A DNA stretch of 64,000 bases from Octopus bimaculoides. Its lineage: Eukaryota. The translations under genes were made by a program, and so were the position numbers. The DNA is taken from contig NC_068995.1 in assembly GCF_001194135.2 (NCBI RefSeq), forward strand, positions 4,051,532 through 4,115,531. The letters run 5' to 3'. The notes beneath the pieces are model-generated. The model did not search any database, had not been told where the DNA came from, and saw only the letters and a list, made by a program, of their open reading frames with translations. This document shows, piece after piece, positions 18,862 through 27,974 of this stretch (positions are counted from its first letter, which is position 1; the number at the start of each line of letters is the position of its first letter).

Positions 18862-18964
18862 CTACAATTCCGTAATTGCAAAAAACAAATGTTTTTATAC
18901 GTGTGTCCGTTGGAACCACAGACCGGTTCATATATAGGCGGACACATTCTTGGGCATCGATAGA
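18862..18964 (-). CDS. Kazal-mucin-Kazal gene, coding exon 4: second Kazal domain, Cys1-Cys5: (V)YRCPRMCPPIYEPVCGSNGHTYKNICFLQLRNC
   Basis: Acceptor ttttttttctctctctctaaag, donor AG|gtaagt, phase 1 to 2 (103 nt). Canonical C-x3-C-x7-C-GSNG-x-TY-x-N-x-C-x6-C. Confidence 0.93.
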
Positions 18965-19117
18965 CTTTAGAGAGAGAGAAAAAAAACATAACTTATAAGT
19001 CTGCAACACATTACATATTTTTAGGTGATATTACAAATGGATAATTGCAGACATACACATACACACACACACACAAACACACCGGCGTGCTAACGGTTCT
19101 GCCAGCTCGCCGCCTTA

Positions 19118-19170
<53 letters not shown>

Positions 19171-19299
19171 GAAGAAGAAGAAGAAGAAGAATAAGAAGAA
19201 GAAGAAGAAGAAGAAGAAGTAGAAGAATAATAACAACAACAACAATATGACCGGCGACAACAATAAAACAAAACCAACAACACGAGCAATAACAACGTA

Positions 19300-19562
19300 A
19301 ACATCTTCTCAAGTACAGGGTTCCGGGTTCACTCCCGCTACGTGGCACATTCGGCAAGTGTCTTCTACTATGGCCTCGGATCAACTAAAGCCTTTTGAGT
19401 GGATTTGGCAGACGGAAACTGAAAGAAGCACGTCGTNNNNNNNNNNNNNNNNNNNNNNNNNNNNNNNNNNNNNNNNNNNNNNNNNNNNNNNNNNNNNNNN
19501 NNNNNNNNNNNNNNNNNNNNNNNNTATATATATATATATATATATATATATGAGTGTGTGTG

Positions 19563-19593
<31 letters not shown>

Positions 19594-19775
19594 ATGCGTG
19601 CGTGCGTGTGTGTTTTTGTGTCTTTGGGTCTGTGTCTGTCGCTCACCACCGCTTGACAACTGGTGTTGGTGTGTTTACGTCCCCATAACTTAGCGGTTCA
19701 GCAGAAGAATCCGATAGAATAAGTGACGGGCTTAAACGAGAAAGTACGGGGTGGGGGTCGATTCATTCAACTAAA
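19300..19775 (+). mobile_element. SINE family 2 with an internal microsatellite and gap, inside intron 3 of the Kazal-mucin gene
   Basis: tRNA-like head ggttccgggttcactccc...ggcaagtgtcttctactat.gcctcgg...gagtggatttgg.agacggaaactgaaagaagc; matches 32231-32610 reversed. Confidence 0.85.
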
Positions 19776-19899
19776 TCTTCTACTAACACAACTTCAACAA
19801 CAATATTCTGCGCCATCAACAAAAACAAAATCAAGCACAAGACTAACATCACCAACATCATCATCATCAACAACAACATGAGCACTTCACTATACAAAC

Positions 19900-24111: not shown

Positions 24112-25109
24112 CTGTTTAAAACAAGTAATAATTACATGTGTAAATATATGTAATGATGTTATTTATTATTATAATTAATTATTATAAGTATAATTATTCA
24201 ATTAATCATCATATATATATTATAATTATTTATTTTAATCATTATGATTAATAATGTTAATGTGGCGATCAGGCTGAATCTTCATCATGGCGGAAGAATT
24301 GCTGCGAAGCTTTTTCGCGCCTCTTTATATACCAAATCGAAAATTACTCTTAGATCGAGTTTACCTTTTATCTTTTCGGAAACGATAAAATGAGTACCAG
24401 TTGAACACTGGGGTTGATATAATCTATTAACCATCAAAACCCTGATGGTCTTGTGCCTAAATTCGTTATTAATAAACGCAGTGAATTGACAGAACCGTTT
24501 GCGCGTCGAGCAAAAATGCTTTGCCGTATTTCTTCCGGCGCTTTATGTTCTGAGTTCAATTTCCGTCGGTGCTTACTTCGCCTTTCGTTCTCTTGGGGTT
24601 GATAAAATAAGTATCAGTTGAGCACTAGAGTCGATGTAATTGAATAAATGCTTCCTGCCTAATTTCATACTCTTTACCAAAATTTGAAACGAATATTAAC
24701 GGTCAAAATAAGGCGGTGAGCTGGTAGAATCGTTACAGCGCCTGACAAAATACTTAGCGGCACTTTTCGTGGTTTTAAGTTCTCTGGGGGTTGGTTAAAA
24801 ATAAATACTAGCCCACACTACCTACAAATTTCAAGCTTTACATCGATCGTGGAAAGAATTTTACTGGTCAAAATATTATTGACATCCGATTTTATTATAT
24901 TAACGAAATGATTTACGTATACGGAATCTTTTAAATCGATTTGAGAACAGTAAATTTTTGTGTTGTATCTAAAATAGTTTTGCAAAGGGACGCTGAAAGA
25001 GTGTTAGTAACAAAAAGGATGGGGTTGAGTTAGTTGGAAAAGGTTTGAGAAGCATTTCATAAGTACAAAGACTTGTGCAGATGTTAGAAATAAACATATC
25101 AAAACTTAC

Positions 25110-25233
25110 AAGCAACCGGCTCTATTCAGGAAGCATTCGTTGGTGTAGGTCACACCGTTCGAACCACAAACCTCACGACGCCTAGGATTACATATTTCAG
25201 GACATTGCAGTGTTCTTCCATTACTGTAAGGCA
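25110..25233 (-). CDS. Kazal-mucin-Kazal gene, coding exon 2: (V)PYSNGRTLQCPEICNPRRREVCGSNGVTYTNECFLNRAGC(L), first Kazal domain
   Basis: Acceptor ttttttcccctaattag, donor TT|gtaagt, phase 1 to 2 (124 nt); canonical Kazal Cys spacing. Confidence 0.95.
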
Positions 25234-25440
25234 CTAATTAGGGGAAAAAATTAAGAACGATAAAATAAATAAAAAAATCATATGTAAGTGTACACACACG
25301 CACAAATATGTGTGTGTTTGTGTGTGTATATATATATAATAATATTAGGGACAAAATCCAAAATTACAGGTAAAAACTCAATTAAAATCAATTTATAAAA
25401 AAATAAAATTAAATTGAGCTTTATAGATAAAATATATATA

Positions 25441-25722
25441 AAATATATAGTTTTAGGGAAAATAACCAAGTTTCAAGAACTCATCGATGAAAATCTACTA
25501 TCACATATAGAAAAATTAATAATTAAAAGCACAATAAATGAGTATAATATAAAGTAAAGTAAATATCATAAGATAAATATAATATAATATATCTTATGAT
25601 ATTTACTTTACTTTATATTATACTCATTTATTGTGCTTTTAATTATTAATTTTTCTATATGATAGTGGATTTTCATCGATGAGTTCTTGAAACTTGGTTA
25701 TTTTCCCTAAAACTATATATTT
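25441..25722. repeat. Near-perfect foldback inverted repeat (arms 25441-25575 and 25590-25722, 14-nt loop) in intron 1 of the Kazal-mucin gene
   Basis: The arms are reverse complements except for one mismatch (T25496/G25667) and a 2-nt bulge. Confidence 0.95.
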
Positions 25723-27562
25723 ATATATATATAATTGCGAAAGAGGACAACAAACATTAAGGCAAGGAAAACATCTCAAGTCGTATTGGAATGGGTGTAA
25801 CCTCGAGTGTGATGGAATTGTTTGTTCATGGTGAGCAGTACTATATTGAGTGCTCTGCGCGGCAATTTATATAAAGTATGGGGGTTTTGTTCACAGATGA
25901 TCTAAACGATTAGGTACGCTAGATAAGTACTGTAACGGATTAGTAGGGCTTCAGGGTTATAGCCGAGACGGTAGTTATGGAGCCATTGCAGATATCCGAT
26001 GCAGCGTATATATATTTGTTAAAGAGGAAAAATTGATTCCAATCGACCAGACATTGTGATCAAGGATTAAAGAGAGGAACTTGTCTGTTAATAGGTATGT
26101 CTGTTGTACTCGTTAACAATTATATATCCGCAGTTCAACTCAACACTTGGCACGCAATCAAATGTTTACGATAGAACTTTACATACTAGACATGAACTGG
26201 ATCCACTAAAATATCCATAGTAACGTCATAAAATAAATCATTTTATTGGTTATCGAGATTATGTGTTTCCGGAACATAAACCAAATGCAAACTTGAAGAT
26301 TTTATACAAAAAGGTATTTATTTTCATACATAAAATTCCACATACATACACCAGACAGACACACATATATAGTTAGAAATAGAGAATCTACGGAATAGTA
26401 TAGTTCCAAGGTAACTAGCAGTGTCTGATACGCAGATATGAGAAATCTTTGAAACAAAAATAATAGATTAGAACACGGTCGTGTTTTTTCCTTATAACGC
26501 TTAAACCTAAATCTGTTCTCCATATATTTATATAGACGCGCACACAGAGACATACAAGAACACATGCAACAGACGCACTCTCACACCCACGCACATACAC
26601 ACAGATACACGTACCCACAAATGTATATATATATATATATACATGCATAGCCATATGCACATATCGTTGTGAAAGCATCTCTCCACCAACGTTTTTCAAA
26701 TCAGCTAATGTTTGTTTTATTCACTCCTCATTCTGACCTATCTCTTCCTTCCATTAACATTTGCTACTTCTCCCTCTTCTCCCACTTTTTATCCTTCTTT
26801 CTCTCATCGCTTTCTTTTCTGTCCCTTTCTTTCTATCTCTGTCTGTCTATCTATCTATTTATCTATCTATCTATCTACCTTTCAACGAGGTGTCTACCTA
26901 AAACAGCAAACTTCTCCCTTACGGCACCAAACATTTACTCTACATTTTCAATTAGAAACGCAAATAATATATGAGATATTCATTATTAATTATGAGTTAT
27001 ATCAAACCAGCTGTCGATGCTATCGTTTTGAGACGACAACCCATGGGTCTATTATATTAACATCTGCTGTCGGTGGATTCAATGTAGATTAATAGATTAG
27101 TTATGTTAAAATATAAATCTACAGCGGCTTGTCAGTGAACTAAATATGGCGGTAATTATCATTCGACAGCTTTGTTATGAGTTATACTGTACGAGCGGCG
27201 TTGAATGTTCATAAACCTTCTCGGCATTTTGTGGTTCCACAGTAATGTTTATTGGAGGTTCGTTCTAAATTGCAGCATCTTTTAAGAAAATGTTTTCTCT
27301 TGAACATAGATTTGAGTGAAAATGGGTTAAATCATGTGGGAAAAAAATTCTATCAGTTTGATTCACACACAGGGGTCACGCTGATTCTGTTTCATAAGGC
27401 CCCGTGGAATACTCATTGTTTCGGGGCCGCTAAAGGGGAGGAAAAGTTAAGTGCTGCAGTCAATGTAATGGGCTTGCCCCTTTCTCCCAATTGCTGACAA
27501 GGTTTGGAGAGAGTTTTCTTTCTTTCTTCTTCTTCTTCTTCTTCTTATTACTATTACCGTCT

Positions 27563-27885
27563 AGCCAACGAGCTGGCATAATCATTAGCACGCCGGGCAA
27601 AATGCGTAGCGATATTTCGTCCAGTCTTTACGTTCTGTGTTCAAATTCTACCGGGGTCGACTTTGCCTTTCATCATTTCAGAATCGATGCAATAAGTATC
27701 AATTACACACTGGGGTCGATGTAATCGACTAGTCCCTCCCCCAAATTTCAGGTCTTGTGTCTATAGTAGAAAGGATGAAAGGCAAAGTCAACCTCGGCGG
27801 AATTTGAACTCAGAACCTAGCGTCAGACGAAATACCGCTATGCATTTCACCCAGCGTGCTAACGTTTCTGCCAGCCCACCACCTT
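27563..27885. mobile_element. Tail-to-tail SINE family 1 copies (+ about 27563-27775, - about 27775-27885)
   Basis: Family consensus present in both orientations. Confidence 0.85.
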
Positions 27886-27925
27886 CACAATAATATGATA
27901 TTCACAAAGCCAATGCCATACTTAC

Positions 27926-27974
27926 CAACAACTAATACGGCAAAAACTAAAATACACTGGCAACTGGCTTTCAT
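27926..27974 (-). CDS. Kazal-mucin-Kazal gene, first coding exon: signal peptide MKASCQCILVFAVLVV(V)
   Basis: ATG at 27974, donor G|gtaagt at 27925 (phase 1). Upstream acceptor tttttctcttcattttag|28002 implies a 5' UTR exon further upstream. Confidence 0.88.

What the first reader, a model, noticed from the sequence alone, without database searches (positions are those of the whole stretch)
18862..27974. Hidden Kazal-mucin-Kazal 'dumbbell' protein of at least ~1,490 aa
Seen: four exons join with matching phases (1, 2, 1, 2) and canonical splice sites into signal peptide + complete Kazal 1 (split over exons 2/3) + ~1,400-aa region dominated by PTS repeats + Kazal 2. Neither Kazal domain appears in the ORF track, which shows only two broken mucin ORFs. 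Known: gel-forming mucins are usually capped by VWD/CK domains, and Kazal domains are protease-inhibitor or follistatin-type modules. Inference: a secreted glycoprotein whose O-glycosylated rod is capped at both ends by Kazal modules, possibly for mucus, egg-case, skin or salivary gland. I do not recognise this architecture as a named family.
Basis: partly seen in the sequence, partly recalled or inferred. Interest (0 to 1): 0.85.

Follow-up and report, generated by a model that had tools for sequence, protein, structure and literature searches.

The report
Kazal-flanked mucin-like gene, 3' end missing
The minus strand carries what looks like a real, unannotated gene for a secreted, sugar-coated (mucin-like) protein. 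It starts with a Kazal module and is followed by a second, incomplete one, but no expression data or relatives could be found, so the "capped at both ends" picture is unproven.

Summary
All exons are on the minus strand:
- Exon 1: 27974-27926
- Exon 2: 25233-25110
- Exon 3: 24111-19900
- Exon 4: 18964-18862

The phases are 1, 2, 1, 2 and all sites are GT/AG.

- **Kazal 1:** spliced over exons 2/3, it matches Pfam Kazal_2 end to end (E = 1.7e-11).
- **Exon 3:** open for 1,400 codons, against 22-121 stops in the other five frames. It is 54% Thr+Ser+Pro and built from degenerate 57-nt (19-aa) repeats.
- **10-N gap:** as written it shifts the frame by one base. The flanks end in the same repeat and overlap by 18 or 132 nt, both multiples of 3, so the frame holds. 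Copy number is unknown.
- **88-N gap:** it lies in intron 3, so the link from exon 3 to exon 4 rests on scaffolding and phase only.
- **Kazal 2:** only Cys1-Cys5 are present. A scan that recovers exon 3's acceptor as a positive control finds no completing exon in the visible 18.8 kb downstream.
- **Evidence not obtained:** no RNA-seq was available, and no relative of the non-Kazal parts turned up among 1.84 billion representative proteins.

Verdict: probably a real Kazal-mucin gene, but the "dumbbell" shape and its function are unproven.

The parts
27926..27974 (-). Exon 1: ATG plus a signal-peptide-like MKASCQCILVFAVLVV(V); donor G|GTAAGT; ends in phase 1
   Evidence: It is the only candidate of its kind in the 10.7 kb upstream of exon 2. 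An in-frame upstream ATG at 28046 is also possible. The signal peptide was judged by eye (n/h/c regions, SNG|R); SignalP was not run.
25110..25233 (-). Exon 2: Kazal 1 from Cys1 to Cys5 plus one residue; phase 1 in, phase 2 out
   Evidence: The frame is closed by a stop 2 codons upstream of the acceptor. Reading through the donor gives an immediate TAA.
19900..24111 (-). Exon 3 (4.2 kb): last 14 residues of Kazal 1 (to Cys71 at 24074-24072), basic linker (24071 to ~23690), PTS-rich repeat region (~23690 to ~20080), non-repetitive C-terminal part (~20080 to 19900)
   Evidence: 0 stops in 1,400 codons. 57-nt repeats. Codon-position composition: A 46% at position 1, C 45% at position 2, A+T 77% at position 3.
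22127..22136 (.). 10-N assembly gap inside the most homogeneous part of the repeat array
   Evidence: The flanks overlap by 18 nt (0 mismatches) or 132 nt (1 mismatch), both multiples of 3. The frame is kept; the copy number is unknown.
19763..19899 (-). Read-through extension of the exon 3 ORF (GLYSEVLMLLLMMMMLVMLVLCLILFLLMAQNIVVEVVLVEDLVE*). Transmembrane-like, but encoded by imperfect (TTG/ATG)n simple sequence. Taken as the start of intron 3.
   Evidence: Similar GT-rich simple sequence recurs further into the intron at about 19300-19140. No Pfam hit passed threshold.
19437..19524 (.). 88-N assembly gap within proposed intron 3, next to (TA)n/(CA)n
   Evidence: It is intronic in the model, so frame is not affected. 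The adjacency of exon 4 to exon 3 is unverified.
18862..18964 (-). Exon 4: Kazal 2 from Cys1 to Cys5 plus one residue (VYRCPRMCPPIYEPVCGSNGHTYKNICFLQLRNC R/S); phase 1 in, phase 2 out; Cys6 missing
   Evidence: It is 50% identical to Kazal 1 over 34 aa. The intron position and phase match those in Kazal 1.

Best explanation
This is a protein-coding gene on the minus strand for a secreted mucin-like glycoprotein.

Proposed layout, N- to C-terminus:
- A short first exon supplies a signal peptide.
- One complete six-cysteine Kazal module follows, split by a phase-2 intron after Cys5.
- A roughly 140-aa basic linker comes next.
- Then a region of about 1,200 aa rich in Thr, Ser and Pro, built from roughly 55-60 degenerate 19-aa repeats. 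Many repeats carry one Cys (motif TP-N-C-D-TP). All of this lies in one 4.2-kb exon and would be densely O-glycosylated, forming an extended rod.
- That exon most likely splices to a downstream exon encoding the first two thirds of a second Kazal module with the same intron position.

The transcript must therefore continue into at least one more exon. That exon is not visible: it may be hidden in an assembly gap (for example 17191-17948) or lie beyond the window.

Inferred function: an extracellular, glycan-rich coat or secretion. Its Kazal modules probably act as compact disulfide-knotted binding or cross-linking ends, as in follistatin or agrin, rather than as classical serine-protease inhibitors, because P1 is Pro in both.

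What is shown: the exon anatomy, the domains, the open frame and the repeat structure. What is inferred: secretion, glycosylation, the exon 3 to exon 4 join and the function.
For: - Splice sites and phases were read directly.
- Kazal 1 becomes complete only when exon 2 is joined to exon 3: Pfam Kazal_2 positions 1-48 of 48, E = 1.7e-11. That validates the junction.
- The frames of exons 2, 3 and 4 open only 2-10 codons before the acceptors.
- Only one signal-like phase-1 exon lies upstream.
- Exon 3 has 0 stops in 1,400 codons against 22-121 in the other frames, and its unique flanks are open too.
- The 57-nt repeat period is a multiple of 3.
- The gap flanks are in register and in frame.
- Both Kazal exons share subtype (C4-x6-C5), the motif VCGSNG-TY-N-CFL, 50% identity, and identical intron position and phase.
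- The best solved-structure matches to Kazal 1 are agrin, follistatin and a sea-anemone elastase inhibitor.
- No AATAAA or ATTAAA lies between the ORF stop at 19763 and exon 4.
Against: - There is no transcript evidence.
- No homologue of the linker, PTS or C-terminal parts was found, so there is no conservation test.
- Repeat copies differ about equally at codon positions 1, 2 and 3. No amino-acid-level constraint on the repeats is visible.
- The exon 3 to exon 4 link crosses an 88-N gap, and exon 4 sits on a 1.5-kb contig bounded by two gaps.
- Kazal 2 cannot be completed from the visible downstream sequence.
- The exon 3 donor is only moderate, and the ORF could instead run on to a stop at 19763.
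Confidence: 0.6

Rival explanations
1. There are two transcription units, or a relic exon. The gene ends with exon 3: signal, Kazal, PTS, and possibly the hydrophobic read-through tail acting as a membrane anchor. The Kazal 2 exon then belongs to another downstream gene or is a leftover of an old duplication.
For: - The ORF continues 45 codons past the proposed donor through a 24-residue hydrophobic stretch to a stop at 19763.
- The exon 3 donor CAG|GTTTGT is weaker than the other three donors.
- An assembly gap separates exons 3 and 4.
- Kazal 2 lacks Cys6, and no completing exon is visible.
Against: - The hydrophobic tail is encoded by imperfect (TTG/ATG)n simple sequence like that elsewhere in the intron. 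It is followed by an acidic tail with no basic residues, which is unlike a stop-transfer signal.
- No poly(A) signal lies in the visible 19763-18965 stretch.
- Exon 4 has a strong acceptor and donor, keeps all five Cys and the core motif at only 50% identity to Kazal 1, and is in the phase set by any of the three possible exon 3 donors.
- Exon 4 has no signal exon of its own. The in-frame Met at 18989 gives only MFFFSLSK.
Confidence: 0.2
2. It is not a functional gene. The long ORF is a by-product of a 57-nt minisatellite whose unit happens to lack stops, next to decaying Kazal exons. It would be an unexpressed or pseudogenised locus.
For: - Differences between repeat copies are spread evenly over codon positions, and non-synonymous changes far outnumber synonymous ones: 66 vs 16 and 102 vs 14.
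- The + strand of the array also shows ORFs up to 332 aa.
- No homologue and no annotated protein was found.
Against: - Copies have diverged by 20-43%, yet not one stop arose in 1,400 codons. 43 are expected from position-specific composition, P about 3e-19.
- The 157-codon linker and the 330-codon non-repetitive C-terminal part are open in the same frame (P = 2e-5 and 1.5e-9), while their other frames hold 6-26 stops.
- Kazal 1 is complete, and its last 14 residues sit at the very start of the big ORF behind a proper acceptor.
- Relaxed, composition-only constraint is the norm for mucin PTS repeats (general knowledge).
Confidence: 0.1
3. It is a true dumbbell. One short final exon supplies about 13 residues plus Cys6 and a stop, so the mature protein is Kazal, PTS rod, Kazal and nothing else.
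For: - By analogy with Kazal 1, only about 14 more residues are needed.
- A 758-N gap lies 0.9-1.7 kb downstream of exon 4, within the range of this gene's introns of 0.9-2.7 kb.
Against: - There is no direct evidence. The scan that recovers exon 3's acceptor as a positive control (score 13.6) gives at most 3.7 downstream of exon 4.
- In this gene, the exon that completes Kazal 1 goes on for 4.2 kb, so the exon completing Kazal 2 could equally carry further modules.
Confidence: 0.25

Closest known systems
Agrin (vertebrate; PDB 8s9p) and arthropod 'agrin-like' multi-Kazal proteins
   Same: The Kazal subtype is the same: CP..C-x7-CGS[DN]G-TY-x3-C-x6-C-x13-C. Agrin is the best solved-structure match to Kazal 1 (summed E = 8.6e-35, best single module 4e-05). 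Decapod 'agrin-like' proteins are among the top library hits. From my own knowledge, agrin also combines Kazal/follistatin-like modules with Ser/Thr-rich mucin-like segments.
   Different: Agrin has nine Kazal-type modules in a row plus laminin-EGF, SEA, EGF and LamG domains (own knowledge). None of these was found in the visible model. Here there are only two Kazal modules, with about 1,400 aa between them. There is no similarity outside the Kazal modules.
Invertebrate and oomycete multi-domain Kazal serine-protease inhibitors (dipetalogastin-like, 'four-domain proteases inhibitor-like', Phytophthora/Plasmopara inhibitors)
   Same: They share signal peptide plus Kazal at the N-terminus, and the same C4-x6-C5 spacing (825 of 898 modules).
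   Different: Those are tandem Kazal arrays without long PTS regions (no Ser/Thr/Pro-rich stretch over 50 aa in the top 150). Their P1 is mostly R, K, A or L. Here P1 is Pro in both modules, which occurs in 1.9% of related modules.
Small mosaic mucins whose Cys-rich modules are not VWD/CK, for example Xenopus skin mucin FIM-A.1 (TFF modules)
   Same: The logic is the same: a secreted protein with highly O-glycosylated regions plus small disulfide-rich modules that are not the VWD/CK set (PMC7177656 for FIM-A.1). From memory, insect intestinal mucin (peritrophin-A/chitin-binding domains with PTS) and lubricin/PRG4 (SMB, mucin domain, hemopexin) follow the same plan.
   Different: The module type is different: Kazal instead of TFF, chitin-binding or SMB. 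There is no sequence relationship. Here the C-terminal end is not even defined.
Gel-forming mucins (MUC2/MUC5 type)
   Same: A large single exon of PTS tandem repeats whose period is a multiple of 3, with a homogenised centre and degenerate edges.
   Different: No VWD, C8, TIL, CysD or cystine-knot domains. The protein is much smaller.

Membership tests
Kazal domain (Pfam PF07648 Kazal_2 / PF00050 Kazal_1) | Profile match above the curated cut-off over the whole domain | tested here: met
   Kazal 1: Kazal_2 44.4 bits (cut-off 22.8), positions 1-48 of 48. Kazal 2: 32.7 bits, above the cut-off, but only positions 2-33 of 48.
Kazal domain (Pfam PF07648 Kazal_2 / PF00050 Kazal_1) | Six cysteines in the Kazal spacing (disulfides 1-5, 2-4, 3-6) | tested here: inconclusive
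   Kazal 1 has all six: C27, C31, C39, C50, C57, C71. Kazal 2 has five (C1462-C1492). Cys6 must come from an exon that is not visible. Disulfide pairing cannot be tested here.
Canonical Kazal serine-protease inhibitor | A reactive-site loop whose P1 residue (second after Cys2) fits a protease S1 pocket | tested here: inconclusive
   P1 is Pro in both loops (C-N-P-RRREV-C and C-P-P-IYEPV-C). Pro occupies this position in 17 of 898 related modules. From memory, Pro is among the poorest P1 residues in ovomucoid third-domain variants.
Secreted mucin-like protein | A long Pro/Thr/Ser-rich tandem-repeat region | tested here: met
   T+S+P is 54% over residues 216-1200. Repeats are 57 nt (19 aa). All lie in one 4.2-kb exon.
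Secreted mucin-like protein | N-terminal signal peptide | tested here: inconclusive
   MKAS, then a 13-residue hydrophobic core, then PYSNG|R. This was judged by eye and by a hydropathy scan. No signal-peptide predictor was available.
Secreted mucin-like protein | Dense O-glycosylation of the PTS region | not testable with these tools
   Needs glycoproteomics or lectin/PAS staining of the native protein.
Gel-forming mucin | VWD-C8-TIL assemblies and a C-terminal cystine knot | tested here: not met
   Only Kazal families reached significance in hmmscan of the model. The 3' end is unknown, so a C-terminal domain cannot be fully excluded.
Agrin | Tandem follistatin/Kazal array plus laminin-EGF, SEA, EGF and LamG domains | tested here: not met
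   None of these domains is in the visible model. Similarity to agrin is confined to the Kazal modules.
Membrane-tethered mucin | A transmembrane helix (usually with a SEA domain) at the C-terminus | tested here: inconclusive
   A hydrophobic 24-mer exists only if the exon 3 donor is not used. It is encoded by simple sequence and lacks flanking basic residues. No SEA hit.

The most novel reading that the evidence does not exclude
A lineage-restricted class of invertebrate mucin in which an O-glycosylated rod with periodic cysteines is terminated by Kazal modules carrying an unusual Pro at P1. The Kazal ends would act as specific docking or cross-linking heads, or as inhibitors of an unusual protease class. 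That would give mucus a built-in protein-binding or anti-proteolytic function. No relative has been annotated in any genome searched.
Probability: 0.2. Interest if true: 0.55.

Novelty: new variant of a known kind. Interest (0 to 1): 0.38.

Why it matters
If expressed as modelled, it adds a new module combination, Kazal plus PTS rod, to the small set of non-VWD mosaic mucins. It would also show that gene predictors can miss a gene of about 1,500 codons when assembly gaps fall inside its repeat array and its domain-bearing exons are tiny.

It would be a candidate structural component of a mollusc-type secretion, with a testable question about what Pro-P1 Kazal modules bind.

As it stands it is a plausible but unverified gene model in a fragmented assembly. 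It bears on no long-standing open question.

Tried and rejected
- **RNA-seq.** I had no run ids, so read laying was not attempted.
- **Word-indexed homologue searches.** The N-terminal 236 aa and the C-terminal 362 aa gave no hits.
- **Full HMMER scan of 1.84 billion representatives.** I used a 1,196-aa model with the central repeats trimmed. Every best match was to a Kazal module only, and none of the top 150 has a PTS region.
- **JGI metagenome scans.** Two scans found nothing.
- **Literature searches.** Kazal plus mucin, PTS, cephalopod, octopus or mollusc returned nothing describing this architecture.
- **AlphaFold on residues 18-206, no alignment.** pLDDT was 38.7, which is unusable, so no fold search was run.
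- **Search for exon 5.** A regex scan with acceptor filter and a PSSM built from 753 Kazal tails gave no credible candidate. The one at 15611 (RVLSPENSSYFPC..) scores -10.4 and was rejected.
- **ORF 8315-8878 as a continuation of the gene.** Rejected because its acceptor is phase 1 and exon 4 ends in phase 2.
- **Paralogues of the gene's unique parts in the window.** None, only SINE and microsatellite matches.
- **Organism identification through a retroelement ORF.**
- **Rfam.** No matches.
- **Plus strand as the coding strand.** Rejected: 22-121 stops per frame.

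
Full report
**Observation**

The finding lies on the minus strand.
- Exon 1 (27974-27926): ATG, MKASCQCILVFAVLVV, donor TTG|GTAAGT, phase 1.
- Exon 2 (25233-25110): acceptor ..cctaattAG|, donor TT|GTAAGT, phase 2.
- Exon 3 (24111-19900): acceptor ..tttaaacAG|, donor CAG|GTTTGT, phase 1.
- Exon 4 (18964-18862): acceptor ..ctctctaaAG|, donor TAG|GTAAGT, phase 2.

In exons 2, 3 and 4 the reading frame is closed by a stop only 2, 7 and 10 codons upstream of the acceptor. 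The open frames therefore start where the splice sites are.

An in-frame ATG at 28046 is an alternative start.

A six-frame motif scan finds exactly two Kazal cores in the 64-kb window. Both are on this strand and they flank the large ORF.

**Domains**

The spliced N-terminus matches Pfam Kazal_2 over the whole profile (positions 1-48 of 48, 44.4 bits, E = 1.7e-11). The last 14 residues of this module, LSDSPVRFRHRGRC, are the first residues of exon 3. The domain is complete only across the 25110/24111 junction, which is the strongest internal evidence for the model.

Exon 4 matches Kazal_2 at E = 7.9e-8, but only at profile positions 2-33. It carries Cys1-Cys5 and ends in phase 2, one residue after Cys5. 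That is the same intron position and phase as in Kazal 1.

The two modules are 50% identical over 34 aa. At the DNA level they are barely alignable, so the duplication is old and both copies kept every cysteine.

By sequence, Kazal 1 is closest to agrin, follistatin and a sea-anemone elastase inhibitor among solved structures. Among library proteins it is closest to decapod 'agrin-like' and 'dipetalogastin-like' multi-Kazal proteins.

**The big exon**

The frame has 0 stops in 1,400 codons. The other five frames have 22-121 stops. 43 stops would be expected even from the exon's own position-specific base composition (P about 3e-19).

Base composition by codon position is strongly skewed: A 46% at position 1, C 45% at position 2, A+T 77% at position 3. 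This is what Thr, Ser and Pro codons give in an AT-rich genome.

The non-repetitive linker (157 codons) and C-terminal part (330 codons) are open in the same frame, with chance probabilities of 2e-5 and 1.5e-9.

Residues 216-1200 are 28% Thr, 16% Ser and 10% Pro. Ser+Thr+Pro stays at 0.38-0.68 from about residue 200 to about 1400.

Tandem Repeats Finder gives a 57-nt (19-aa) unit with 114-nt and larger higher-order units. Copies are 80-86% alike in the centre and 63-72% alike at the edges.

Copies differ about equally at the three codon positions. No amino-acid-level purifying selection shows among the repeats; only the open frame and the composition are maintained. That is usual for mucin PTS regions, but it also means this test does not add support.

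Twenty-seven cysteines lie between the two Kazal modules, many in a TP-(N/D)-C-(D/N)-TP motif, and there are five C-x4-C pairs.

**The gaps**

The 10-N gap (22127-22136) shifts the frame by one base as written, which is why the ORF track shows two ORFs.
- The upstream flank ends exactly on a codon boundary (..TPSSSITE). The downstream flank starts in frame 0 (SSSITETF..).
- The two ends overlap by 18 nt with no mismatch, or by 132 nt with one mismatch. Both lengths are multiples of three.
- Both contigs therefore end inside the same 114-nt higher-order repeat, and any join that respects the repeat keeps the frame.
- The number of units is unknown, so the visible model is about 1,450-1,490 aa or more.

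The 88-N gap (19437-19524) lies in proposed intron 3 beside a (TA)n/(CA)n run.
- It does not affect any frame.
- However, exon 4 sits on a 1.5-kb contig bounded by two gaps. Its adjacency to exon 3 rests on scaffolding, strand and phase.

**The 3' side**

Three phase-1 donors are available at the end of exon 3: 19990, 19918 and 19900. All are compatible with exon 4, so the exact boundary is open.

If none is used, the ORF runs through LMLLLMMMMLVMLVLCLILFLLM to a stop at 19763. This looks like a membrane anchor. It is encoded, however, by imperfect (TTG/ATG)n simple sequence like that found deeper in the intron, and it lacks flanking basic residues. No poly(A) signal is visible before exon 4.

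Exon 4 ends in phase 2 without Cys6, so at least one more exon is required.
- I built a position-specific matrix from 753 Kazal C5-C6 tails and scanned every AG in phase 2.
- The scan recovers the exon 3 acceptor as the top hit in the whole window (13.6; real tails average 15.6 ± 5.6).
- It gives at most 3.7 anywhere in the 18.8 kb downstream of exon 4.
- The completing exon is therefore hidden in a gap, lies outside the window, or does not exist. The 758-N gap at 17191-17948 lies at a typical intron distance.
- The 'dumbbell' is thus not established.

**Relatives**

Two word-indexed searches, with the N-terminal 236 aa and the C-terminal 362 aa, gave nothing.

An exhaustive HMMER scan of 1.84 billion representatives gave 1,175 hits.
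- Among the 150 best, every best-scoring stretch lies in residues 6-88 or 1150-1196 of the query, that is, in the Kazal modules with the adjoining signal peptide or linker start.
- The 150 best are tandem multi-Kazal proteins, and none has more than 50 aa of PTS-rich sequence.
- The library does hold RefSeq eukaryote proteins. The absence of any match to the linker, PTS or C-terminal parts therefore means that no annotated relative is in that library.
- A retroelement ORF from the window finds relatives mostly 44-67% identical, so this genome itself is probably not in the library. 'Unannotated in its own genome' cannot be claimed.

Metagenome scans and literature searches also found nothing.

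**Mechanism**

The best-supported reading is a secreted, densely O-glycosylated rod with a compact disulfide-knotted Kazal head, and probably a second one.

At the canonical P1 position (second residue after Cys2) both modules have Pro: C-N-P-RRREV-C and C-P-P-IYEPV-C. The second loop aligns residue for residue with the ovomucoid loop C-T-L-E-Y-R-P-L-C. Pro is found there in only 17 of 898 related modules.

From established knowledge of ovomucoid P1 variants, Pro is among the worst P1 residues. I therefore favour a binding or cross-linking role of the follistatin/agrin kind over classical protease inhibition. This is inference only.

The periodic cysteines in the rod could give intermolecular disulfides. 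That is also inference.

**Comparison and novelty**

It works like the small mosaic mucins in which O-glycosylated regions are combined with small Cys-rich modules other than VWD/CK. Examples are Xenopus FIM-A.1 with TFF modules (PMC7177656) and, from memory, insect intestinal mucin and lubricin. Its modules are of the agrin or invertebrate-inhibitor Kazal subtype.

It is not a member of the gel-forming mucins or of agrin, because their defining domains are absent.

I rate it a new variant of a known kind. It is of moderate interest, limited by the lack of any expression or conservation evidence and by the missing 3' end.

Noticed in passing
window 8315-8878 (-) and 162-312 (-): A 187-aa hydrophilic ORF with several dibasic sites (..DGNKAGSNAEKRAMGNAAIDIPAIKRVKRENS..KKKKQGRG..KRSVEE..YKRRRNALYSPPE..). 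A polypyrimidine tract and a phase-1 acceptor precede it. A paralogous 152-nt piece, 81% identical and covering the acceptor plus about 35 codons, lies 8.4 kb further downstream. No Pfam hit. It could be exons of another, possibly secreted or propeptide-like, gene.
   Followed up: partly
window 25204-25110 and 18956-18866 (-): Both Kazal modules carry Pro at the canonical P1 position, which is rare (1.9% of 898 related modules). The Kazal 1 loop NPRRREV closely resembles a loop NPRKKEV in a rotifer multi-Kazal protein (P0103, Seison nebaliae).
   Followed up: partly
window ~23690-20080 (-): The PTS repeats hold 27 cysteines. Most sit in a TP-(N/D)-C-(D/N)-TP motif, and five C-x4-C pairs occur (VCNTPGC, DCNDSVC, NCDTPEC, DCSTPEC, GCGTPLG-type). 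The homogenised central repeats have Ser where the outer repeats have Cys.
   Followed up: no
window 27745-27895, 28086-28240, 19085-19106, 2274, 5182, 47058, 49753: A SINE-like element with core GCTGGCAGAAMCGTTAGCACGC occurs 7 times, where 0 are expected by chance. Two copies bracket exon 1 and leave only about 190 bp of unique sequence around the start codon. One copy lies in intron 3.
   Followed up: partly
window 49077-49808 (-): An ORF with a long poly-Asn run and a retroelement-type C-terminus (..PKADVDRLYLPR..). Relatives are mostly 44-67% identical, in ENA and Logan assemblies. One relative lies just downstream of an RVT_1 reverse-transcriptase gene.
   Followed up: partly
window 28046 (-): An in-frame ATG 24 codons upstream of the proposed start would add MEIIIILLYFSLHFSRSTSKEYVE. 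Which start is used depends on the unknown transcription start.
   Followed up: no
whole window: There are 14 assembly gaps in 64 kb, most of them flanked by (TA)n, (CA)n or (GA)n microsatellites. The gene spans three contigs of the scaffold.
   Followed up: no
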